Below are positions 3,413-33,946 of a stretch of 36,475 nt of DNA, piece after piece; the first letter of the stretch is position 1, and each line of letters begins with the position of its first letter. Origin of the DNA: Octopus sinensis. Lineage: Eukaryota. The notes beneath the pieces are model-generated. The model searched no databases, had not been told where the DNA came from, and saw only the letters and a program-made list of their open reading frames with translations. The DNA lies in assembly GCF_006345805.1 (NCBI RefSeq), contig NW_021824676.1, positions 1 through 36,475 on the forward strand, read 5' to 3'. Both the position numbers and the translations under genes were made by a program.

Positions 3413-3496
3413 CTATTATACGATTCTTCTGTTGATAGCAGTGTGACACACTACCCAGCTTAGTATACATATTTTCATCGAAAGGAGAAGCTTAAT

Positions 3497-3700
3497 TATT
3501 TTTACTCTAGGTACAAGGCCTGAAATTTTGGGGGAGGAGGCCAGTCGATTAGATTGACCCCAGTACACTACTGGTACTTAATTTATCGACCCCGAAATTA
3601 TGAAAGGCAAAGTCGTCCTCGGCGCTATTTGATCTCAGAACGTAATGACAGGATATACTGCAAACCATTTCGCCCGGAGTGCTAACGTTTCTGTCAAGCT
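3497..3700 (-). mobile_element. tRNA-derived SINE, family B
   Basis: TACTCTAGGTACAAGGCC...CTGGTACTTAATTTATCGACCCC...GCTAACGTTTCTG; matches copies at 17614-18012, 20277 and 32155. Confidence 0.92.
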
Positions 3701-4068: not shown

Positions 4069-4420
4069 CCGCGGGCCATACGTCCCCTGCCCAATTCAGG
4101 ATCACAACATATAGATACACTGCGATATAGTTTCTTTTCCTCAACAGGCCCTGCTCTGTTTAACATTATCTCTAAACAGATCGAAGAGGAAAAGGATCAC
4201 ATAACCTTTAAACGGTGTCTGGGGAAATTTCTTCAAGGAATACCGGATAAGCCACCGATACCTGGATACAACTCACTCAACAAGAACTCAGTACTTGAAT
4301 GGAACACGATACCACAAAACTTGACTTTAAAAGGATTTAGATAATCCTATCAGGTGGCGCTATTAAGTTAGACAGGACCTGGACCAATCTTTGGTCGAAA
4401 CATATCTAAGTTTTTAAGTT
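4069..4420 (+). mobile_element. 3' end of a CR1/L2-group LINE (ORF2 C-terminus plus 3' UTR)
   Basis: Frame 4069-4344, no ATG, reads PRAIRPLPNSGSQHIDTLRYSFFSSTGPALFNII...TFKRCLGKFLQGIPDKPPIPGYNSLNKNSVLEW...*. This fits the 'F...GP.LFN..P......FK..LD.FL..IPD.P..PGY....NS' terminus of invertebrate CR1/L2-type RT ORFs. Confidence 0.8.
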
Positions 4421-4628: not shown

Positions 4629-4656
4629 GTATATATATATATATATATATATATAG

Positions 4657-4712
<56 letters not shown>

Positions 4713-4862
4713 AATTAAGGACTGAACACGAAAAGCGGACAGTCAACATGCTAGATATAGACGTCAAATCGCCATTCTCCACAAAAAGTCTATGTTCTCA
4801 GATCAAACTCAACAAAACCAAAGCAATAAACAAGTGAAAAATATACGAAAATAAATATTTAC

Positions 4863-4928
4863 CCATGTACTAAATTTAGTTTCGGTTGTTATTTTCCGCA
4901 AGGAAAAGTGCAACCATCATCAGCATGG
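4863..4928 (-). ncRNA. Type I hammerhead ribozyme (copy 1)
   Basis: Minus strand: CCATG-CTGATGA-T-GGTTG[CACTTTTCCTTGCGGAAAATAA]CAACC-GAA-ACTA[AATT]TAGT-A^CATGG. Stem I 5 bp, stem II 5 bp, stem III 4 bp, full core, GUA cleavage triplet (cut between 4868 and 4867). Confidence 0.92.
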
Positions 4929-5375
4929 TCCCATATAAAATGCAATTTGCTATACTAAATGCCAATACGATACCGAAATATCGCGTGCATGGAGTACGGC
5001 CTATTACATTTGAAATATATATTTCAAATGTCTCTACTTTTGGCGCGATGAGACCCGAGAAAACTAGCCTGCAGCTAATAGTTAGTAGCAGTTAATTTAT
5101 CGGTTAGAGCACAAATATTTATATAAAATTAAATTTAGGGTAAAAATTGATATTTATCAATTAGAACCAGTGGTCTAGCATATTAAAGAAAGAATCCGAA
5201 GATTAAAATATTTATATATACCAATTAAGGACTGAACACGAAAAGTGGACAGTCAACATGCTAGATAGACGTCAATCGCCATTCTCCATCTCCTCAAAAA
5301 GTCTATGTTCTCAGATCAAACTCAACACAAAACCAAAGCAATAAACAAGTGAAAAATATACGAAATAATATTTAC

Positions 5376-5440
5376 CCATGTACTAAATTAGTTTCGGTTG
5401 TTATTTTCCGCAAGGAAAAGTGCAACCATCATCAGCATGG
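5376..5440 (-). ncRNA. Type I hammerhead ribozyme (copy 2)
   Basis: Same as copy 1 except the stem III loop is 3 nt (ACTA-ATT-TAGT); cut between 5381 and 5380. Confidence 0.9.
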
Positions 5441-5900
5441 TCCCATATAAAATGCAATTTGATATACTACATGCCAACACGATATCGAAATATCGCGTGC
5501 ATGGAGTACTGCTATTACATTTGAAATATATATTTCAAATGTCTCTACTTTTGGCGCGATGAGACCCGAGAAAACTAGCCTGCAGCTAATAGTTAGCAGC
5601 AGTTATTTATCGGTTAGAGAACAATATTTTATATAAATTAAGTTTAGGGTAAAAATTGATATTTATCAATTAGAACCAGTGGTCTAGCATATTAAAGAAA
5701 GAATCCGAAGATTAAAATATTTATATATACCAATTAAGGACGAACACGAAAAGTGGACAGTCAACATGCTAGATATAGACGTCAGATCGCCATTCTCCAC
5801 AAAAAGTCTCTGTTCTCAGATCAAACTCAACAAACAAACCAAAGCAATAAACAAGTGAAAAATATACGAAATAAATATTTACCCATAATTATATATATAT

Positions 5901-5962
<62 letters not shown>

Positions 5963-6106
5963 GGGTGGTTGTGATATGTTTGTGTTTGTGTGTGTGTTAT
6001 ATCTCGTTTAGGCATCGCATCTTATAGCAGAAACAGCTGTGTAAGTAATGAAATTCTTAAGATAATATTCATTTCTTTGACCAGCTCTCTTTCGTATATA
6101 TATATA

Positions 6107-6411: not shown

Positions 6412-6586
6412 TATAATTTTTGCCCTATTTTCATAACTCGTTCTGGTTTAAATTGAACTGATTACGTTCATTTCAAATACACGTTGTCGCTTCCATGCCG
6501 GTCGATTCTTGCTTCAATGTTCTTTATATTAGTTGCTTTTATTTATTTATTTTTAATCAATTTGCATTACTCTTTTACCCTTTACT

Positions 6587-6985
6587 ATTTTACTTGTTTC
6601 AGTCATTTGACTGCGGCCATGCTGGAGCACCGCCTTTAGTCGAGCAAATCGACCCCAGGACTTATCATTTGTAAGCCTAGTACTTATTCTATCGGTCTCT
6701 TTTGCCGAACCGCTAAGTTACGGGGGACGTAAACACACCAGCATCGGTAGTCACGCGATGTTGGGGGGACAAACAGACACACAAACACACACACACACAC
6801 ATATATATATACATATATACGACGGCTTTCTTTCAGTTTCCGTCTACCAAATCCACTCACAAGGCTTTGATTGGCCCGAGGCTATAGTAGAGGACACTTG
6901 GCCAAGGTGCCACGCAGTGGGACTGAACCCGGAACCATGTGGTTGGTAAGCAAGCTACTTACCACACAGCCATTCCTGCGCCTAT
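6587..6985 (-). mobile_element. tRNA-derived SINE, family A (full length)
   Basis: Minus head ATAGGCGCAGGAATGGCTGTGTGG (A box)...GGTTCAGTCC (B box), CACCTTGGCCAAG core, internal (CA)/(TA) tract, tail GGCCGCAGTCAAATGACTGAAACAAG; several copies in window. Confidence 0.95.
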
Positions 6986-10756: not shown

Positions 10757-10960
10757 GTGGCGAGCTGGCAGAATCGTTAGTACGCTGGGCAAAATACTTA
10801 CCGACATCTCGTCCGTCTTCGCGTTCTGAGCTCAAATTCCACCGCGGTCGACGTTGCCTTTCATTCTACGAGTTCGACGAAATAAGTTCCAGTTGAGTAC
10901 TGGAGTCGATGTAATTGACTTACCCCTCCCCCTAAATTGCTGGCCTTGTGCCAAAATCTG
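10757..10960 (+). mobile_element. tRNA-derived SINE, family B
   Basis: TGGCGAGCTGGCAGAATCGTTAG...GAGCTCAAATTCC...GCCTTTCATTC...CCCTAAATTGCTGGCCTTGTGCC. Confidence 0.9.
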
Positions 10961-11095
10961 AAATGGATATTACAAGAGCTGATTTATTCGACTATTCTAT
11001 TCTTTGCTAATACTGTTAGAAATAGCAAATAAATCTTCATTAAATCACAAAATCTTCTGGAATCACTTCACTATCTTAATCCACTGCCTCTCGAA

Positions 11096-11587
11096 GAAGG
11101 GTCACCAAACTTTTTCACGGCCTTATAACCATTTTGTTCAATACAATGCAGGGAATAAACAAAAAAATAAAGACAACCAACATATTTATTTACCAAAAAG
11201 TTATTAAAGAAGGCGATGTTAGAAATATGTTATATCACACCCACTGCGCACATATCCGAATCTCACAAACTAAGCATTAAAAATGGTTAGTGAGATTTGT
11301 GAAACTGGTGTTTAGCTTTTAAGATTTCATCAATATTTGCTTTGGAATTGCTGCATATAACCAAGGATTTGCTTTCAGTCAACCTGTTTCGATGTGCTGG
11401 CTTCACATCCTTCATTTTTGAAAATGTTTGCTCACAGACATAAGTTGTTCCAAATACTGATGCCATACTAGAGGCAAATAAACTCTCATTGCAGGTGCTT
11501 ACACAAAAGGTACAGTGCAGTGGCGGACCGAATTAACTGACCGTGCAGGCCGGATCCGGTCCGCGGGCAGTAGTTCGGTGACCCCTG
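11096..11587 (-). mobile_element. hAT (Charlie-group) deletion derivative
   Basis: TIRs GAAGGGTCACCAAACT / AGTTCGGTGACCCCTG; 8-bp TSD CTCTCGAA (11088-95) vs CTCTAGAA (11588-95), fitting the Charlie NTCTAGAN target; transposase C-terminus inside. Confidence 0.92.
11287..11520 (-). pseudogene. hAT transposase C-terminal dimerisation-domain remnant
   Basis: Open frame ...SMASVFGTTYVCEQTFSKMKDVKPAHRNRLTESKSLVICSNSKANIDEILKAKHQFHKSH*; matches the FGSTY.CEQ.FS.MK..K...R.RLT motif of Charlie/SPIN/GTF2IRD2-type transposases. Confidence 0.9.
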
Positions 11588-13345: not shown

Positions 13346-13512
13346 AGTAAAAGGACGCACATATATAAACATATATATATTTATATATATATGTAAATGG
13401 ATGTATGCATGCGTGTATGTATTTATATATATAAGTGTGTATATATGTGTATATATAATATATACACATACACGCATAAACACAAATATATATACATATG
13501 TGTACATATATT

Positions 13513-13945
<433 letters not shown>

Positions 13946-15555: not shown

Positions 15556-15649
15556 GATATTATATATATATTATATATATATCCCTTTTTATATATATGT
15601 ATATAAATATATATATAATATATATATAAATATTATATATATATTATCT

Positions 15650-16044
15650 CTTTTACTTGTTTCGGTAATTTGACTGCGGTCATGCTGGAGCACCGACTTT
15701 AGTCGAACAAATCGACCCCAGGACTTACTCTTTGTAAGCCTAGTACTTATTCTATCAGACTCTTTTGCCGAACCGTTAAGTTATGGGGACGTAAACACAC
15801 CAGCGTCGGTTGTCAAGTGATGGCGAGGAAACAAACACACCCACCCAGATTAATACTTATAATATATATATTTATATACCACAGGCTTCTTTCAGTTTCC
15901 ATCTGCCAAACCCATTCACAAGGCTTTGGTCGGTCCGAGGGTATAGTAGAAGACACTTGCCTTAGGTGCCACGTAGTGAGACTGAAACTGGGAACATGTG
16001 GTTGGGAGGTAAGCTACTTACCACACAGCCACGCCTGCACCTAT
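15650..16044 (-). mobile_element. Family A SINE (full length)
   Basis: Colinear with 6587-6985. Confidence 0.95.
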
Positions 16045-16097
16045 TAGAATATATAATATTATATATATATATATATACATACATTCTTTTATATTCT

Positions 16098-16145
16098 ATT
16101 ACTTGTTTCAGTTATTTGACTGCGGCCATGCTGGAGCATCGCCTT
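16098..16145 (-). mobile_element. Family A SINE tail fragment
   Basis: ACTTGTTTCAGTTATTTGACTGCGGCCATGCTGGAGCATCGCCTT, broken off at a fold-back junction. Confidence 0.85.
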
Positions 16146-16316: not shown

Positions 16317-17401
16317 AAAAGAATTAGAATAACACCTGCGTTAAACTCCATTTATTTATTTATATATATTATACAAAAAATTTCACGTAAACTCACGTTA
16401 CAACCTTTTTACTTGTGTGATTTTTTGCTAGCCTGATTTTATCTATTTTTTCCGTGTTAATTGCTAACAAGGGAAAAATACACACATCTATTTAAATATT
16501 ATATATATATATATATAGTAAACAAAGAAATGGATATCTCAAATTATTACTACATGCGTTTCGCTAGCGTGGTTATTTATTGTAAAGGGGAAATATATTA
16601 CATAACATTAATAAAATCCTCGTTTTTATACAACCACCCCATTTCTGTGTGTGATATTCAGCTTCCGTTCATATATAATGTGTTTTGGTATTTAAGAAGG
16701 GTTTCTTTTTTTTATTCCTGAGTTCAGAACACGTGAAGGCCAATTTTGCTTTTCGTCCCTCCGGGCTTGATAAAATAAATATCCTAGTATCAATTAAACC
16801 CCTTTCCATAAATATCAGATTTTGTGCTTATATTAGAAACAATTATTATTTAAATTATTGCTGCAGTTGTCGAGTGTGATTTTAGAGTGCAGACATACTC
16901 TCCAAAATTTAGGAAACATCGATAAGTGATATTGAATGGAAATGTTTCTTGTGTCGGGTTATTTTTCGAACAGTGAACATCAGATCATCAGCACATCTCC
17001 CTCAGTACTGGAATATTAAGGAAGCTGTATCAACAGAAGGTTGTTTGTAGACGTATTTATTTCATTTATTATAATTCTTTTGTGTTTGCAATAATTTTCA
17101 ATATAGTTTTCTCTGCCAGAGGAGCTATAAGAGAGTTAGTGGCATGAAAGGAACAGCTTTGAATACAACCATTTAGGAAATAACAATATATCAAACTTTT
17201 GACATACAAAAGCGAATTAAAAAAAAGATAAACAAAAATGGAATTTTAAAAATAAATACAGAGACATTGTCAATGAAATAAACAATACACTTGCAAATAG
17301 TCAAATTTGATGTCTAGACATGCAAATTTGCCCAGTATAAACAAAAACATCAACGTGCACAAATACATGTAGTTATTGTCAAATTGGTTTCATATTTTGG
17401 C

Positions 17402-18012
17402 ATAAGGCCAGCAATTTTGGCGAGAGGAGCTAGTCTCTTAACTCGATCCCAGTGCTCAATTGGTACATATTTTTTTTCAACCACAAAAGGATGAAAGGCA
17501 AAAATCAACCTCGGTGGAATACGAACTCAGAACGTAAAGACGGACGACATGCCGCAAAGCAGTTTTCCTTGATGTGCTAACGATTCGGCCAGGTCACTGC
17601 CTTGACAGTTATTCTTTTCTACTCTAGGCACAAAGCCCGAAATTTTGGGGGAAGGGGACCAGTCGATTAGATCGACCCCAGTACGCAACTGGTACTTAAT
17701 TTATTGACCCCAAAAGGATGAAAGGCAAAATCAACCTTGGTGGAATTTGAACTCAGAACGTAAAGACGGACGAAATACCTATTTCTTTATTACCCTCAAG
17801 GGGCTAAACATAGAAGGGACAAACAATGACAGACATAGGTATTAAGTCGATTACATCGACCCCAGTGCGTAACTGGTACTTAATTTATCGACCCCGAAAG
17901 GATGAAAGGCAAAATCAACCTTGGTGGAATTTGAACTCAGAACGTAAAGACGGACGAAATACCGCTAAGCGGTTTTCCTCGATGCGCTAACGATTCAGCC
18001 AGGCCTCTGCCT
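17402..18012 (-). mobile_element. Tandem cluster of three family B SINE segments
   Basis: Core CTGGTACTTAATTTATCGACCCC...ACTCAGAACGTAAAGACGGACGA is repeated three times; GACAGTTATT occurs at 17604-13 and 18014-23. Confidence 0.9.
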
Positions 18013-18741
18013 TGACAGTTATTAACAAATTCTGAAAATTATGAAGGTTTTAGCTTTTCTCATGCTGTCATAAACAAGCAAGTAACTGACAAACAAAACC
18101 TTGTAACAAAGAAAGGCCCGTCTTTGCCGGAGTACAATATTCAAGAGAGAAGAGATGAAGTCACCGATCCAATATTATCAATATCAGAATAGGATTTCTC
18201 ATTGACTCAGAAAAGCAATTAGAGATGGCACTGGTGAATGTAGACATATATCCTTGTATGTGCGTATGTGTTGTATGTGTTATATGTATGTATGTAAGTA
18301 CGTATGGCTGTTTGTAAGCATAGCTTATAAATATTTAATAAATACATTCACTCTCTGTAACATACTGAATACGTTCCTTTAGATGTGATTCTCTACGTTT
18401 TTATAAACGAGAACATCAACAATTTTTCATATACACACAAACAGATTCTGGTGTCAGATTTGCAAGATAAATAATGTTTTATGCGGTTCAAACTTTATCT
18501 AATATAGAACACAAAACACTGAGTTGTGTGGATAGATATGTGCATTATATCTAAAAAGTCGATGAACAGTTTCAAACCATGCTAGATTGCTTTAACACTT
18601 AATTCATCTTTTGCAACGTTGTTGTGAAGGTGTGCGCGGTAGTGAGAGCTTTATATGTGTGTGTATATATATATATAATAAACACAGAGAGATGGGGAGA
18701 TAACTATACATATATACTATAATTGCGTGAACACACATAAT

Positions 18742-19750: not shown

Positions 19751-20120
19751 GTTGCCATAGTGGCTGAGTGGTAAGTAGCTTGCTTCCCGACCACATAGCT
19801 CCGGGTTCAGTCCCCCTGCGTGGCACCTTGGTCAAGTGTCTTCTACTACAGCCTCGGGCCGATTAAAGCCTTGTCAGTGGATTTGGTAGTCGGAAACTGA
19901 AAGAAGCCCGTCGTATATATATATTTTTGCATGTCTGTATTTGTCCCCTACCATCGCTTCACAACCATTGTTGGTGTGTTTACGTCCCCGTAACTTAGCG
20001 GTTCGGCAAAAAGAGACCGATAGAAAAAGTAATAAGCTTTACAAAGAATAAATCCTAGGGTCGATTTGTTCGACTAAAGGCGGTACTCCAGCATGGCCGC
20101 AGTCAAATGACTGAAACAAA
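19751..20120 (+). mobile_element. Family A SINE (full length, sense)
   Basis: TGGCTGAGTGG A box, GGTTCAGTCC B box, tail GCATGGCCGCAGTCAAATGACTGAAACAA. Confidence 0.95.
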
Positions 20121-20276
20121 CATGAGAAAAAATATGTTGATGGCAGCTTTTAGATGATGGTCCACTTGTTGTAATCGATGCTTTATGAATAAGATTATTA
20201 TCATTATAATTATCATTATCCACTTTTCACTTGAGAAGGAAATTGAGAAGGAAATGCAGTCCAGGACTGAGTTGGG

Positions 20277-20454
20277 TTTTTTTTCTACTCTGGGCACAAG
20301 GCCCGAAATTTTGGTGGGAGAGAACCAGTCGATTAGATCGACCCCAGTACGCAACTGGTACTTAATTTATCAACTCTGAAAGGATGAAAGGCAAAGTCAA
20401 CCTCGACGGAATTTGAACTCAGGACGTAAAGACAGCCGAAATACCGCTAAGCAT
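20277..20454 (-). mobile_element. Family B SINE (head-truncated)
   Basis: Matches 3497-3700. Confidence 0.9.
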
Positions 20455-20473
20455 GTCGTTGTTTTTATTAGTA

Positions 20474-22511: not shown

Positions 22512-22529
22512 GATATATATATATGTGTA

Positions 22530-22853
22530 TATATAAATATATTATATATATATATATATATTATGTGTGTATATATAAATATATTATATTTATATATACG
22601 TTTTGTAACTTATTCGTATAATACGTGTATATAGATATGTATATATACATTATATATGTATATATAAATATATTATTTATATATATATCTTATATATGTA
22701 TATATATCTATACGTTTTGTAACTTATTCGTATAATACGTGTATATAGATATGTATATATACATTAGTATATGTTATATAAATATATTATTTATATATAT
22801 ATCTTATATATGTATATATATATATACGTTTTGTAACTTATTCGTATAATACT

Positions 22854-22894
<41 letters not shown>

Positions 22895-23003
22895 TATATA
22901 TGTTATATATTATAAATATAAATATATATATATATATATTATATATATATATATATTTATATATACACGTTTTGTAACTTATTCGTATAATACGTGTATA
23001 TAT
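22530..23003. repeat. ~114-bp AT-rich minisatellite
   Basis: Marker CGTTTTGTAACTTATTCGTATAATAC at 22599, 22713, 22827 and 22968. Confidence 0.9.
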
Positions 23004-23620: not shown

Positions 23621-24144
23621 GATTCCTTGCTGTCCACAATAAAGACAGGCAGCATACAGGCAGACGTGCAGATGGCCAGGTAGGTAGGTAGGTAGGTAGG
23701 TAGGTAGGCAGGTAGAAAGGTAGGCAGGTAGGTTGGTAAGTAGGTGGGTGGGTGGGTAGGTAGATAGATAGAGAGAGGGGGCGAGAGAGAGAAGAACGAC
23801 GTCGTTATAGCATTGCTGCCGAGTCAATAGACACAATGGAGAGCCCATTAGAGAATTTGTAAACCTGACAAACGAAAGAACACACGTTCAATCTAAAGAG
23901 GTCTCATTCGCCTTCAGTGCGATGAAAATTACGCATGGTTTATATCTGACAACATGCAGAATGTATCATCTTGTGGATTAGGTTTCATAATTTATCAAAC
24001 TGTGTAACTGGTTTCTTTTGGAAATTATTATTCAGCACACCGTACAGTGAGTGAAATTAAAGTACGTGAATTAAAATGTATAGCAGACGCAGGTTTTGCA
24101 GTGTGGCTAAGAAGTTCGCTTTGCATCTACGTGATACCAAACTA

Positions 24145-24374
24145 GAAGTTAAGATCACCAAACATAGATTGGCATATTTCGGTCATATTATGCGGAGAAA
24201 ATCTCTGAAGAAGGAAGAGGCCGTCCAAGAACCCGTTGGCTTGACACCATGAAGAGTGATACCGGAATGGACATAGCCAGTCTGAAAGAAAGGGCCGGGA
24301 TAGAACTGACTGGAGGACACTGATCCAACGAGTGACCGAGAGTCGACTTCAACTGAGCGGATAGATAGATAGAT
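24145..24374 (+). mobile_element. RTE/BovB-like LINE 3' fragment with (GATA)n tail
   Basis: LEVKITKHRLAYFGHIMRRKSL..GRGRPRTRWLDTMK...DRTDWRTLIQRVTESR; probable TSD GATACCAAACTA (24133-44) / GATATCAAACTA (24372-83); splits an old SINE head. Confidence 0.9.
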
Positions 24375-24536: not shown

Positions 24537-24590
24537 ACGGTCATTTTTTGTTTTGCTAAATAACCACACACACACACACACACACTTATC

Positions 24591-24794
24591 CTTTTACTTG
24601 TTTCAGTTATTTGACTGCGGCCATGCTGGAGCAACGCCTTTAGCCGAACAAATCGACCCCGGGACTTATTCTCTGTTCTATCGTTCTCTTTTTGCCGATC
24701 CGCTAGTTGAAGGGGACGTAAACACACCAGCATCGGCTGTCAAGTGATGGTTGGGGGGACAAACACAGACAAATAACAAACACATACATATATA

Positions 24795-24850
<56 letters not shown>

Positions 24851-25120
24851 ACCACGGTGATAGTTTCTAACTTGGTGAGAATGGTGGTATCGGCGGGGTA
24901 GTTATGGTGATGGCATTAGTGTGGTGATGGTCGTGGTAAGATTGGTATTGATTACCATGTGCTTCTTTCAGTTTCCGTCTACCAAATCCACTCACAAGGC
25001 TTTGGTCGGTCCGAGGCTATAGTAGAAGTCACTTGCCCAAGATGCCACGCAGTCGAACTGAACCCGGAACAATGTTGTTGGGAAGCAAGATTCTTACCAC
25101 ACAATCACTCTTGCCCTTAT
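24591..25120 (-). mobile_element. Family A SINE interrupted by a (TAG)n-anchored repeat (24795-24961)
   Basis: Tail 24591-24790 and head half 24962-25120 are colinear with 6587-6985. Confidence 0.9.
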
Positions 25121-28959: not shown

Positions 28960-29745
28960 GGAGACCTGGCAGAATTGTTATAGCATCGGACAAAAATGCT
29001 TAGTACCATTTTTCCGGCTCTTTATGTTTTAAATTCAAATGCCAATCCGCTCTCGGTCGAGGAAATAAAGTACCAATCAAATACTAGGCTCAATGCAATT
29101 GTCTAACTTCTTCCCTTCAAAATTGCTGGCCCAGTACAAAGATTAGAAAGAATTATTAAAGTGGCGGGCTGACAGAATCATTGGCGCATGGTATTTTTTC
29201 CGGATTTTTACGCTCTGCATTCAAATGCCCTCAAGGTCAACATTGCCTAACATCACCTCGAGGTTGATAAAATTAAGTACCAGTCAATTACTGGGGTATA
29301 AGTTATCGACTAACTTACCTTCCCTCAAAATTACTGTGACAAAAATTAGAACAGTTATGTGCGAATAACGAAATATTCGGCAGAGATGGGCACTGACTGG
29401 GATTTCCCGATACGACCTGAACAGACACCAACAAATGGTGGACGCACCGACGCACTGCGACTGCGACTGCGTCTGCACCTACACCGGATCTGACCTGAGT
29501 AACGTGAGACGACGAATTAGAAGAATCGTTAGCTGGCCGGAATAAACGTTTTACCGTTTTACGGTATTTCTTCGGACACAAAAGTTCAAACCTCAGGAAG
29601 TTAGAATTATGCGTTGAAATCACGCTGGAGTCAACTTTGCCATTCATCCTACTGTGGACGATAAAATTAAGTACCAGTCATGTATAGAGGTCGTTGGCAT
29701 CGACCGATAATCTCCTCTCAAAATGGCTGGCTCTGTGCCTTATTA
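28960..29745 (+). mobile_element. Three old family B SINEs (~28960-29150, 29158-29345, 29510-29745)
   Basis: GCAGAAT heads and GATAAAATTAAGTACCAGTC cores. Confidence 0.75.
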
Positions 29746-32109: not shown

Positions 32110-32149
<40 letters not shown>

Positions 32150-32515
32150 CTATACCTTACACCCAAGGGGCTAAACACAGAGGGGACAAACAACGACAAA
32201 GTCGATTACATCGACCCCAGTGCGTAACTGGTACTTAATTTATCGACCCCGAAAGGATGAAAGGCAAAGTCGACCTCGGCGGAATTTGAACACGGAACGT
32301 AACGACAGACGAAATACGGCTACGCATTTCGCCCGGCGTGCTAACGTTTCTGCCATATATACGACGGGCTTCTTTCAGTTACCATCTACCGAATCCACAC
32401 ACAAGGCTTTGGAAAGCCCGAGGCTATAGTAGATGACACTTGCCCAAGTTGACAAGCAGTGGGACTGAATCCGGAACCGTATGATTGGGAAGCATGGTTC
32501 TTACCATCCAGCCAT
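31812..32515 (-). mobile_element. Family A SINE with a nested family B variant (32155-32355)
   Basis: A tail 31812-31990, microsatellite, B-variant SINE, then A head half from 32362. Confidence 0.88.
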
Positions 32516-33586: not shown

Positions 33587-33664
33587 TACTAGTAACATAT
33601 TCTCTATGTACAAACAGTTATGTGTATGGGCACGTATGTGTATGTATATATATATATATATATT

Positions 33665-33946
33665 CTTTTATTTGTTTCAGTCATTTGACTGCTGCTATGC
33701 TGGAGCACCGCCTTTAGTCGAACAAATCGACCCCAGAACTTATTCTTCGTAAGCCTAGTACATTTGCCGAATCGGGCGACGCGTTGAGTTCTTGAGCAAA
33801 ACACTTCATTTCACCTTCCTTCAATCCACTCAGCTGGCAAAATTGAGCAACCATGCGATGAACGGCCCTTCCGTCCCGATCCGGAATATATACGCCAATG
33901 AAACCGGAAAACTGGCCCTCATGAGACTGGCATGGCTCGGGGAGTA
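33665..33946. mobile_element. Family A tail (minus) fused to a 5'-truncated family D SINE (plus)
   Basis: A tail to ~33770, then CGGGCGACGCGTTG..CTTGAGCAAAACAC...CCACTCAGCTGGCAAAA...GAAACCGGAAAACTGGCCC. Confidence 0.75.

What the first reader, a model, noticed from the sequence alone, without database searches (positions are those of the whole stretch)
4711..5886. Retrozyme-like system: 510-bp tandem repeat with a complete hammerhead in every full unit
Seen: 2.3 tandem units. Each full unit carries on the minus strand a textbook type I HHR (CUGAUGA core, extra U after A9, GGUUG/CAACC stem II with a branched loop, GAAAC, 4-bp stem III, GUA site, CCAUG/CAUGG stem I). No coding capacity is recognisable. 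Established: animal non-LTR retrozymes are non-coding tandem repeats whose transcripts self-cleave into monomers that circularise and are retrotransposed in trans. The monomers I recall are mostly shorter than 510 nt. Inference: this is a cephalopod retrozyme family producing a ~510-nt (cut-to-cut 513 nt) linear or circular RNA. I cannot confirm whether it has been described.
Basis: partly seen in the sequence, partly recalled or inferred. Interest (0 to 1): 0.92.

Follow-up and report, generated by a model that had tools for sequence, protein, structure and literature searches.

The report
Hammerhead-ribozyme tandem retroelement in a TA microsatellite
A 1.2-kb array of 2.3 copies of a 510-bp non-coding repeat carries a complete self-cleaving hammerhead ribozyme motif in each full copy and sits inside a (TA)n microsatellite, so it is best read as one more "retrozyme" (a ribozyme-bearing parasitic retroelement known in many animals), not as a new kind of system.

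Summary
Positions 4711-5886 are 2.3 head-to-tail units (510, 509 and 157 bp; 94-95% identical). Each full unit has, on the minus strand, every conserved hammerhead core nucleotide, three helices and a GUA cleavage site. The two cut sites are 513 nt apart. A strict descriptor found only these two sites in the window and none in 400 simulated windows.

- The motif is not "textbook". No Rfam hammerhead model matches it, even at E<=10.
- It shows published traits of Penelope-like-element (PLE) hammerheads: an unpaired U between A9 and G10.1, a 5-bp helix I, a long helix II and a palindromic, marginally stable helix III.
- Loop 2 is not branched. It is an internal loop followed by a 6-bp hairpin.

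New findings:
- The array is embedded in a (TA)n microsatellite, a published PLE target.
- Its 5' end on the ribozyme strand lies 1 nt from the predicted scissile bond.
- Its 3' end lies in the unit's own UAUAUAUA tract.

This fits reverse transcription of a ribozyme-processed, possibly circular, RNA.

Not testable here: source organism, other genomic copies, transcription and cleavage. A 510-nt unit is within the published range (51-972 bp). Verdict: new member of a known kind, moderate interest.

The parts
4630..4710 (.). Left (TA)n microsatellite, about 41 repeats. It abuts the 3' end of the minus-strand element and is read as one half of the target microsatellite.
   Evidence: TRF row 4630-4710, period 2, 95% matches; sequence
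4711..5886 (-). Whole tandem array: 2.3 units of a ~510-bp non-coding repeat, GC 33.5%. The ribozyme sense is the minus strand.
4711..5220 (-). Unit 1 (510 bp), the 3'-most unit on the element strand. It ends in GGU + AUAUAUA, which merges with the left (TA)n.
5221..5729 (-). Unit 2 (509 bp), 94.2% identical to unit 1. Its private changes include a 6-nt insertion.
5730..5886 (-). Unit 3, a 157-bp 5'-truncated copy. Homology to the full units stops at ACCCAT|, 1 nt short of the predicted ribozyme cleavage site.
4863..4928 (-). Hammerhead copy 1 (66 nt): helix I CCAUG/CAUGG; core CUGAUGA with an unpaired U; helix II GGUUG/CAACC plus extension; GAA; helix III ACUA/UAGU with an AAUU loop; cleavage after GUA, between 4868 and 4867.
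5376..5440 (-). Hammerhead copy 2 (65 nt), identical to copy 1 except for a 1-nt deletion in loop 3. Cleavage falls between 5381 and 5380.
4842..4937 (-). Extended ribozyme domain of copy 1. The predicted distal helix I is 9 bp (UAUAUGGGA/UUUUCGUAUA with G-U pairs) and lies beyond a 12-nt bulge on the 3' strand.
   Evidence: constrained fold; centroid
4868..5380 (-). The only cut-to-cut monomer at this locus (513 nt, 5'-CAUGGG...UUUAGUA-3'). [quoted passage not shown]
5006..5031 (.). 26-bp perfect palindrome inside unit 1 (CATTTGAAATATATATTTCAAATG). The same palindrome occurs at 5517-5542 in unit 2. It contributes to the predicted self-pairing of the RNA.
   Evidence: inverted self-hit
5887..5962 (.). 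Right (TA)n microsatellite, about 37 repeats. It abuts the 5' end of the minus-strand element and is read as the other half of the target.
   Evidence: TRF row 5890-5962

Best explanation
This is a non-autonomous, non-coding retroelement of the retrozyme type, probably derived from and mobilised by a Penelope-like element (PLE). It is present here as one 2.3-unit tandem insertion inside a (TA)n microsatellite.

Proposed mechanism:
1. The minus strand is transcribed. This step is inferred and no promoter was identified.
2. The two hammerheads cut after GUA, at 5381|5380 and 4868|4867. Helix III is a marginally stable, perfectly palindromic 12-mer, so cutting probably works best when two ribozymes in a multimeric transcript pair as a double hammerhead.
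3. [quoted passage not shown]
4. A reverse transcriptase supplied in trans copies this RNA at a nicked (TA)n target. Priming occurs on the element's own UAUAUAUA tract, and synthesis passes the unit more than twice. The template is either a circle copied round and round or a multimeric RNA.
5. Synthesis ends at the ribozyme-generated 5' end.

Shown here: the repeat, the complete ribozyme motif, its energetic accessibility, and the positions of both junctions. Inferred: transcription, cleavage, circularisation, the identity of the reverse transcriptase, and present-day activity. The units differ by 5-6%, so the insertion is probably not recent.
For: 1. All conserved hammerhead positions are present in both copies: C3-A9, G12-A14, A15.1-U16.1, C15.2-G16.2, G10.1-C11.1 and H17=A. 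They sit in a type I topology.
2. The motif is unlikely by chance. It gave 0 hits in 400 simulated windows, and my estimate for this quality is about 1e-5 per window.
3. The ribozyme fold costs nothing relative to the MFE: -21.4 vs -21.4 kcal/mol for copy 1 and -19.5 vs -19.9 for copy 2. Helices I, II and III have ensemble probabilities of 0.44-0.67.
4. The only difference between the two core ribozymes (helices I-III and core) is a 1-nt indel in loop 3. Further indels lie in the predicted helix I bulge, not in any helix.
5. The array's 5' end on the ribozyme strand (ACCCAT|AATT at 5886/5887) is 1 nt from the scissile bond. The chance of falling within +-1 nt is about 3/510 = 0.6%.
6. The 3' end lies in the unit's only (UA)4 tract, and both flanks are (TA)n. 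(TA)n is a published preferred target of Naiad PLEs, with a similar microsatellite bias hypothesised for Neptune PLEs (PMC8557442).
7. [quoted passage not shown] As a hairpin, helix III has dG of 0 to +0.8 kcal/mol. As a palindromic duplex it has -10.8 kcal/mol.
8. The general features match the published non-LTR retrozyme definition: tandem, low GC, non-coding, no LTR/PBS/PPT (PMC7229834). The size is within 51-972 bp.
9. The unit has no ORF above 77 aa and no Pfam domain.
Against: - No Rfam hammerhead covariance model reports the motif, even at E<=10 on 101 nt. Recognition rests on a descriptor, and no independent model supports it.
- There are only two near-identical ribozyme copies, so no covariation test is possible.
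- No other copy exists in the window, and no relative was found in any searchable collection. Dispersal, which separates a mobile family from a single-locus minisatellite, is therefore untested.
- The predicted self-pairing of the 513-nt RNA (z = -2.6 to -4.6) is equal on both strands, and one control segment matches it. It does not discriminate.
- No reverse transcriptase or GIY-YIG ORF was found in 1-18 kb.
- Helix III has 4 bp, longer than in the 'minimal' PLE hammerheads.
- The units differ by 5-6%, so the copy may be old and silent.
Confidence: 0.75

Rival explanations
1. The array is a leftover of an autonomous Penelope-like element (a tandem of its pseudo-LTR with the ORF never included or later lost). 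It is not an independently propagating retrozyme family.
For: The ribozyme has PLE-type traits. PLEs insert as partial tandems with 5'-truncated upstream copies and target (TA)n. The 2026 preprint finds that retrozyme consensus sequences are sister to PLE pLTRs.
Against: The units join head to tail with no ORF remnant, and the array ends cleanly in (TA)n on both sides. No RT or GIY-YIG match was found in ORFs of 1-18 kb. PLE 'minimal' hammerheads usually lack a real helix III, whereas this one has 4 bp. This reading overlaps with the main one rather than excluding it.
Confidence: 0.15
2. One monomer, or a fragment, was inserted once. The 2.3-copy array then arose locally by replication slippage or unequal crossing-over, as in ordinary minisatellite birth. 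No rolling-circle reverse transcription or multimeric RNA was involved.
For: The units differ by 5-6%. Unit 2 carries private changes, and units 1 and 3 are closer to each other over their shared 157 bp. The 2026 preprint discusses satellite-type local amplification of retrozymes.
Against: The partial unit sits at the 5' end and stops at the cut site, while the 3' end sits in the TA tract. That is the layout expected from a single continuous cDNA. Local duplication does not predict it, though it does not forbid it either.
Confidence: 0.07
3. It is an ordinary minisatellite that contains a hammerhead-like string by chance, with no ribozyme function.
For: Rfam models do not recognise the motif. 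There is only one locus in the window. AT-rich helices I and III are easy to form by chance.
Against: The descriptor gave no hit in 400 simulated windows, and my estimate is about 1e-5 per window. The array boundary coincides with the predicted scissile bond (about 0.6% by chance). The only variation between the copies falls in loops. The (TA)n flanks fit a known retroelement target.
Confidence: 0.03

Closest known systems
Metazoan non-LTR retrozymes (Cervera & de la Pena 2020, NAR, PMC7229834), e.g. the Mytilus galloprovincialis 350-390-bp repeats and the Acropora millepora 220-240-bp repeats
   Same: Head-to-tail non-coding repeats of a few hundred bp with low GC (<45%). Each unit carries one type I hammerhead. 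There are no LTR, PBS or PPT features. Arrays range from dimers upward. Like the mussel ribozymes, this one lacks the archetypal loop1-loop2 contact nucleotides.
   Different: The unit is 510 bp. That is longer than the ~170-400 nt quoted for invertebrates, but inside the 51-972 bp range of the 2026 vertebrate survey. The ribozyme has an unpaired U after A9 and a long, interrupted helix II. Copy number, expression and circularity are unknown here.
Hammerheads of Penelope-like elements (Cervera & de la Pena 2014, PMC4209133; Lunse, Weinberg & Breaker 2017, not readable here)
   Same: [quoted passage not shown] The host element inserts as a partial tandem.
   Different: PLE 'minimal' hammerheads have no helix III, or only 1-2 bp. 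This one has 4 bp plus a tetraloop, closer to the Drosophila virilis-type variant. No RT/GIY-YIG ORF lies between or beside the repeats.
Amphibian satellite 2 / axolotl retrozymes (330-350 bp)
   Same: Tandem repeats transcribed into multimers. A weak, palindromic helix III means cleavage is efficient only as dimers.
   Different: The amphibian motifs keep the canonical loop-loop tertiary contacts and a 1-2-bp helix III. They are recognisable as classical type I hammerheads.
(TA)n-targeting PLE clades (Naiad, Neptune; Craig et al. 2021, PMC8557442)
   Same: The insertion lies inside a (TA)n microsatellite, so no target-site duplication can be read.
   Different: Naiads lack canonical hammerheads. 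No PLE protein is encoded at this locus, so the link is by target preference only.

Membership tests
Hammerhead ribozyme, type I | Conserved core C3 U4 G5 A6 N7 G8 A9 ... G12 A13 A14 | tested here: met
   CUGAUGA and GAA are present in both copies.
Hammerhead ribozyme, type I | Three helices around the core, with helices II and III closed by loops and helix I open; A15.1-U16.1 pair; cleavage after a non-G residue 17 | tested here: met
   Helix I has 5 bp, helix II has 5 bp plus a 6-bp extension, and helix III has 4 bp. The pairs are A15.1-U16.1 and C15.2-G16.2, and the site is GUA|C.
Hammerhead ribozyme, type I | Recognition by the curated Rfam hammerhead covariance models | tested here: not met
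   No hammerhead hit at gathering score or at E<=10 on 1.4 kb and on 101 nt. The likely causes are the extra U, the 22-nt helix II extension and the atypical helices; this is inference.
Hammerhead ribozyme, type I | Helices supported by covariation among homologues | not testable with these tools
   Only two copies exist, and they differ by loop and bulge indels only. No homologues were retrievable.
Hammerhead ribozyme, type I | Loop-loop tertiary contacts between helices I and II | tested here: inconclusive
   A 12-nt bulge in helix I and a 3x3 internal loop in helix II both lie 5 bp from the core. No recognisable canonical contact nucleotides were identified.
Hammerhead ribozyme, type I | Mg2+-dependent self-cleavage | not testable with these tools
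   This needs an experiment. Indirect support: the array boundary lies 1 nt from the predicted cut.
Metazoan non-LTR retrozyme | Type I hammerhead inside head-to-tail repeats of about 150-1000 bp | tested here: met
   Units of 510, 509 and 157 bp, with one hammerhead per full unit. Size range.
Metazoan non-LTR retrozyme | Low GC (<45%), non-coding, no LTR/PBS/PPT | tested here: met
   GC is 33.5%. ORFs are <=77 aa with no Pfam hit. The flanks are plain (TA)n.
Metazoan non-LTR retrozyme | Many copies dispersed in the genome | not testable with these tools
   No other copy in the 36-kb window. No eukaryotic genome collection is available. Protein-level proxies came back empty.
Metazoan non-LTR retrozyme | Expressed as self-cleaved linear and circular RNA | not testable with these tools
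   No transcript data are available.
Metazoan non-LTR retrozyme | Highly self-paired predicted circRNA | tested here: inconclusive
   Circular MFE is -121.4 kcal/mol with 64% of bases paired. z is -2.6 to -4.6, but it is the same on the other strand and one control segment is similar.
PLE-associated hammerhead / PLE-derived element | Unpaired nucleotide between 9 and 10.1, G10.1-C11.1 pair, short helix I, enlarged helix II | tested here: met
   A U lies after A9. Helix I has 5 bp. Helix II has 5 bp, an internal loop and 6 more bp. Criteria from PMC4209133.
PLE-associated hammerhead / PLE-derived element | Palindromic helix III/loop 3 that allows a dimeric ribozyme | tested here: met
   ACUAAAUUUAGU is a perfect 12-nt palindrome. 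The hairpin has dG 0.0 kcal/mol and the homodimer -10.8 kcal/mol.
PLE-associated hammerhead / PLE-derived element | Minimal helix III (absent or 1-2 bp) | tested here: not met
   Helix III has 4 bp plus a 3-4-nt loop.
PLE-associated hammerhead / PLE-derived element | Repeats flank, or are homologous to the termini of, an RT + GIY-YIG ORF | tested here: not met
   No RVT or GIY-YIG match in 100 ORF segments from 1-18 kb. Segments from 18-36 kb were not scanned. Homology to PLE termini elsewhere in the genome is not testable.
PLE-associated hammerhead / PLE-derived element | Insertion bias for microsatellites such as (TA)n | tested here: met
   (TA)41 lies on the left and (TA)37 on the right. 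Bias described in PMC8557442. This is a single locus only.

The most novel reading that the evidence does not exclude
The two junctions of this single insertion record how an animal retrozyme was integrated. The cDNA was primed on a nicked (TA)n microsatellite through the element's own UAUAUAUA tract. It was extended more than twice around a ~513-nt circular RNA. It ran off exactly at the hammerhead scissile bond when the circle opened.

If this pattern recurs at other loci of the family, it would be sequence-level evidence for rolling-circle reverse transcription of ribozyme circRNAs. It would also tie non-LTR retrozymes to (TA)n-targeting GIY-YIG (PLE) endonucleases. The 2020 review states that no motif in the repeats points to their mobiliser (PMC7761336).
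Probability: 0.25. Interest if true: 0.55.

Novelty: new member of a known kind. Interest (0 to 1): 0.35.

Why it matters
Ribozyme-bearing tandem retroelements are already documented from cnidarians to amphibians, including a mollusc. Their link to Penelope-like elements has been argued since 2014 and again in 2026. Another family is therefore expected, not surprising.

Three modest points of value remain:
- If the window is from a cephalopod, which is unverified, no paper in the searchable library links hammerheads or retrozymes to cephalopods. Recent octopus and coleoid repeat annotations do not mention ribozymes. Such units are probably filed there as unknown, satellite or Penelope fragments.
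- The ribozyme is intermediate between the 'canonical' retrozyme type and the 'minimal' PLE type. That fits the idea that one derives from the other.
- The junction anatomy (cut site at the 5' end, UA tract at the 3' end, (TA)n target) is a concrete prediction about the integration mechanism. It can be tested genome-wide.

Tried and rejected
- Rfam (three searches): no hammerhead at gathering score or at E<=10. The only hits were low-complexity miRNA-like matches in the TA repeats.
- TRF: cannot report the array because its period limit is 500.
- Pattern scan of viral contigs with the ribozyme core: nothing.
- The same scan of metagenome contigs: four identical freshwater contigs that share the 23 specified bases but have no helix III, helix I or cleavage site. 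I rejected these as a chance match.
- Spurious ORFs of the repeat used as a proxy for DNA homology: exact look-up and homologue search were both empty.
- Organism identification through a 110-aa ORF look-up, a LINE-like C-terminal fragment (4069-4341) and an RTE-like fragment (~24.0-24.25 kb): all empty.
- Strand-specific RNA structure. An apparent excess on the minus strand disappeared once each strand was compared with its own shuffles and with control segments. I dropped it as evidence.
- tRNA-like or Pol III promoter search: ARAGORN found nothing. An A/B-box-like string seen by eye (GACCACTGGTTCTAAT, minus strand) has the wrong spacing and was dropped. TATA-like strings occur in the unit but are uninformative in a 34% GC genome.
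- Pfam on 100 ORF segments from 1-18 kb: only sub-threshold noise.

Full report
**1. What is in the sequence**

Positions 4711-5886 are a head-to-tail array of a ~510-bp unit. BLAST of the first unit against the whole window returns 4711-5220, 5221-5729 (94.2% identity with several small indels) and 5730-5886 (95.0% over 157 bp). It returns nothing else in the 36.5 kb apart from a 26-bp internal palindrome (repeat families; alignment). Tandem Repeats Finder did not list the array because its longest period is 500. The array has 33.5% GC and the window 33.9%. ORFs in the array reach at most 77 aa and have no Pfam match.

**2. The ribozyme motif**

On the minus strand each full unit reads 5'-CCAUG CUGAUGA U GGUUG [CAC UUUUCC UUGC GGAAAA UAA] CAACC GAA ACUA AAUU UAGU A | CAUGG-3'. 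Copy 1 runs 4928->4863 and copy 2 runs 5440->5376.

- Every position that defines a hammerhead is present: C3-A9, G12-A14, the A15.1-U16.1 and C15.2-G16.2 pairs, G10.1-C11.1, and a non-G residue 17.
- The topology is type I. Helices II and III are closed by loops and helix I is open.
- The predicted cuts fall between 4868|4867 and 5381|5380, which are 513 nt apart.
Loop 2 is not branched. It is a 3x3 internal loop followed by a 6-bp helix and a UUGC tetraloop.

**3. Is it more than chance?**

I wrote a type I descriptor requiring the core with an optional inserted base, G10.1-C11.1, helix II >=4 bp, helix III >=3 bp starting A-U, H17, and helix I >=4 bp.

- It finds only these two sites on either strand of the window.
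- It finds none in 400 first-order-Markov windows of the same length and composition, about 29 Mb counting both strands.
- My analytic estimate from base frequencies is about 2e-4 hits per window for that descriptor. For helices as long as those observed it is about 1e-5, which is roughly one chance hit per few-gigabase genome.

The motif alone is therefore good but not overwhelming evidence at whole-genome scale. Its position inside a tandem repeat and the junction evidence in section 6 make chance very unlikely.

**4. Energetics**

- Forcing the hammerhead fold on a 111-nt context gives -21.4 kcal/mol, equal to the unconstrained minimum. For copy 2 the values are -19.5 and -19.9 kcal/mol.
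- In the ensemble, helices I, II and III have pair probabilities of 0.44-0.67.
- The constrained fold extends helix I by a 9-bp distal helix beyond a 12-nt bulge. That bulge and the helix II internal loop both lie 5 bp from the core. This is the geometry in which helix I-helix II tertiary contacts occur in other hammerheads, but I could not test such contacts.
- Helix III is marginal as a hairpin (0.0 and +0.8 kcal/mol). In copy 1 it is a perfect 12-nt palindrome (ACUAAAUUUAGU) that would form a -10.8 kcal/mol duplex with a second copy. That is the arrangement of the classical double hammerhead.

**5. Why Rfam is silent, and what kind of hammerhead this is**

No Rfam hammerhead model reports the motif at gathering score, or at E<=10 on 1.4 kb or on 101 nt. 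'Textbook' is therefore too strong.

Cervera and de la Pena (2014) list recurrent traits of the hammerheads of metazoan Penelope-like elements (PLEs), which they found with descriptors rather than covariance models. [quoted passage not shown] The present motif has all of these. It differs from the 'minimal' PLE form in having a real 4-bp helix III.

An extra residue after A9 is known in active natural hammerheads, and GUA is a known natural cleavage triplet (PMC1636495). I infer, without a direct test, that the inserted U, the 22-nt helix II extension and the unusual helix lengths together push the Rfam scores below the reporting threshold.

**6. The junctions**

This is the new observation. 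Both sides of the array are (TA)n: about 41 repeats at 4630-4710 and about 37 at 5890-5962.

- **5' end on the ribozyme strand (right edge on the plus strand).** Full units read ...TATTTACCCATG|TACTAAAT... The truncated third unit reads ...TATTTACCCAT|AATTATATA.... Homology therefore stops 1 nt short of the scissile bond. The chance that a boundary falls within +-1 nt of that bond is about 3/510, or 0.6%.
- **3' end on the ribozyme strand (left edge on the plus strand).** The last unit ends ...CCUUAAUUGGU followed by AUAUAUA, which runs into the microsatellite. At internal unit junctions the same GGUAUAUAUA is followed by AAUAUUUUAAUC. The 3' boundary therefore lies in the unit's only (UA)4 tract.

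Read on the ribozyme strand, the insertion is one 5'-truncated copy that starts at the cut site, followed by two full copies that end in a UA tract, all inside a (TA)n repeat.

**7. How this fits published models**

- PLEs insert as partial tandems with a 5'-truncated upstream copy.
- Naiad PLEs insert preferentially into (TA)n, and a similar microsatellite bias has been hypothesised for Neptune PLEs, so target-site duplications cannot be read (PMC8557442).
- The retrozyme model proposes that a target-primed reverse transcriptase copies a circular ribozyme RNA into tandem cDNA (PMC7229834).
- A 2026 preprint argues from co-occurrence and phylogeny that non-LTR retrozymes derive from PLE terminal repeats.

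The locus fits these models. The (TA)n target was nicked. cDNA synthesis was primed by pairing of target TA repeats with the RNA's UAUAUAUA tract. Synthesis passed the unit more than twice, on a circle or on a multimeric RNA. It ended at a 5' end made by the ribozyme.

One weaker alternative for the 5' end is that the reverse transcriptase stalled at the base of the folded ribozyme without any cleavage. The 1-nt precision and the weak helix III argue against this but do not exclude it.

**8. What I could not establish**

- **Source organism.** Exact look-ups and homologue searches with window ORFs, a LINE-like C-terminal fragment just upstream (4069-4341) and an RTE-like fragment returned nothing. 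The window is dense in microsatellites and in at least two SINE-like dispersed families. That is compatible with published descriptions of SINE-rich octopus genomes (PMC13282606) but is not diagnostic.
- **Dispersal of the family.** There is no second copy in the window. No eukaryotic genome collection was available. Core-pattern scans of viral and metagenome contigs gave nothing or an unrelated chance match.
- **RNA structure as evidence.** The 513-nt circle folds to -121.4 kcal/mol with 64% of bases paired. However, the z-scores are the same for both strands, and one control segment equals them. I do not count this as evidence.
- **Transcription, cleavage and circularisation.** All remain inferences.
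- **Present-day activity.** The 5-6% divergence between units suggests the insertion is not recent.

**9. Comparison and verdict**

The element works like, and meets the testable structural criteria of, a metazoan non-LTR retrozyme. Its ribozyme is closest to the PLE-associated variant.

- Membership in the retrozyme class is incomplete, because dispersal and circRNA expression are untested.
- Membership in Rfam's hammerhead families fails the model test but passes every sequence-defined catalytic requirement.
- The 510-nt size is within published ranges: 51-972 bp for retrozyme consensus sequences and circRNAs from 150 to >1000 nt.
- No paper in the searchable library connects hammerheads or retrozymes with cephalopods. 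That is a gap in annotation, not in understanding.

I rate it a new member of a known kind, with interest 0.35. The most novel reading still open is that the junction pattern generalises and reveals the integration mechanism and the PLE partner. I give that a probability of about 0.25.

Noticed in passing
window 5881-5966: The right-hand (TA)n is itself a near-perfect palindrome, bracketed by ACCCAT (the element's terminal 6 nt) and its inverted complement ATGGGT at 5961-5966 (inverted repeat I13: 43-nt arms, 88% complementary, no spacer). Apart from the TA repeat, the match is GGGT, about 0.1-0.4% by chance. It could be a snap-back or inverted micro-duplication at the element's 5' end (PLEs often carry an inverted 5'-truncated copy upstream), or it could be coincidence.
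   Followed up: partly
window 4069-4341 (+): A 91-aa open frame (…SFFSSTGPALFNIISKQ…FKRCLGKFLQGIPDKPP…) recalls, from memory, the C-terminal tail of LINE ORF2 proteins. It ends about 290 bp before the left (TA)n, so the target microsatellite may be the 3' tail region of an older LINE copy. It has no Pfam or homologue hit.
   Followed up: partly
window 6585-6985, 13373-13945, 15606-16145, 19759-20135, 24586-25120, 32354-32515, 33641-33765 and others: A dispersed SINE-like family of up to ~400 bp is present in at least 8 copies, on both strands, at 70-92% identity. ARAGORN finds no tRNA-like fold anywhere in the window.
   Followed up: partly
window 3495-3699, 10762-10963, 17388-18023, 20278-20458, 29190-29332, 32145-32355: A second dispersed repeat family of ~160-220 bp is present in at least 8 copies at 72-96% identity. 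Three of the copies are adjacent at 17.4-18.0 kb.
   Followed up: no
window ~24000-24250 (+): A frameshifted fragment (…HRLAYFGHIMRR… / …GRGRPRTRWLDTMKSD…) recalls, from memory, the C-terminus of RTE-type LINE reverse transcriptases. The homologue search was empty.
   Followed up: partly
window 11290-11532 (-): An 81-aa frame has a sub-threshold match to the hAT transposase C-terminal dimerisation domain (PF05699, E=0.005, 17 bits against a cut-off of 21.4). It is probably a decayed hAT DNA transposon.
   Followed up: partly
window 10983-11204 (+): A 74-aa frame has a weak match to the TANGO6 N-terminal domain (PF25267, 15.3 bits against a cut-off of 27; E=5e-4 alone, about 0.05 after 100 tests). 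It may be noise or a small exon. If it is an exon, the array would lie in or near a plus-strand gene.
   Followed up: partly
window 22516-22939: A separate AT-rich tandem repeat has a 114-bp period and 3.7 copies (88% matches) inside a long (AT)n tract. It is unrelated in sequence to the 510-bp unit.
   Followed up: no
loci L001-L004 (metagenome contigs Ga0181347/49/51/65): Four freshwater metagenome contigs share an identical stretch that contains CTGATGATGGTTG...CAACCGAAAC. It has no helix I or III and no cleavage site. I judged it a chance match to the 23 specified bases.
   Followed up: yes
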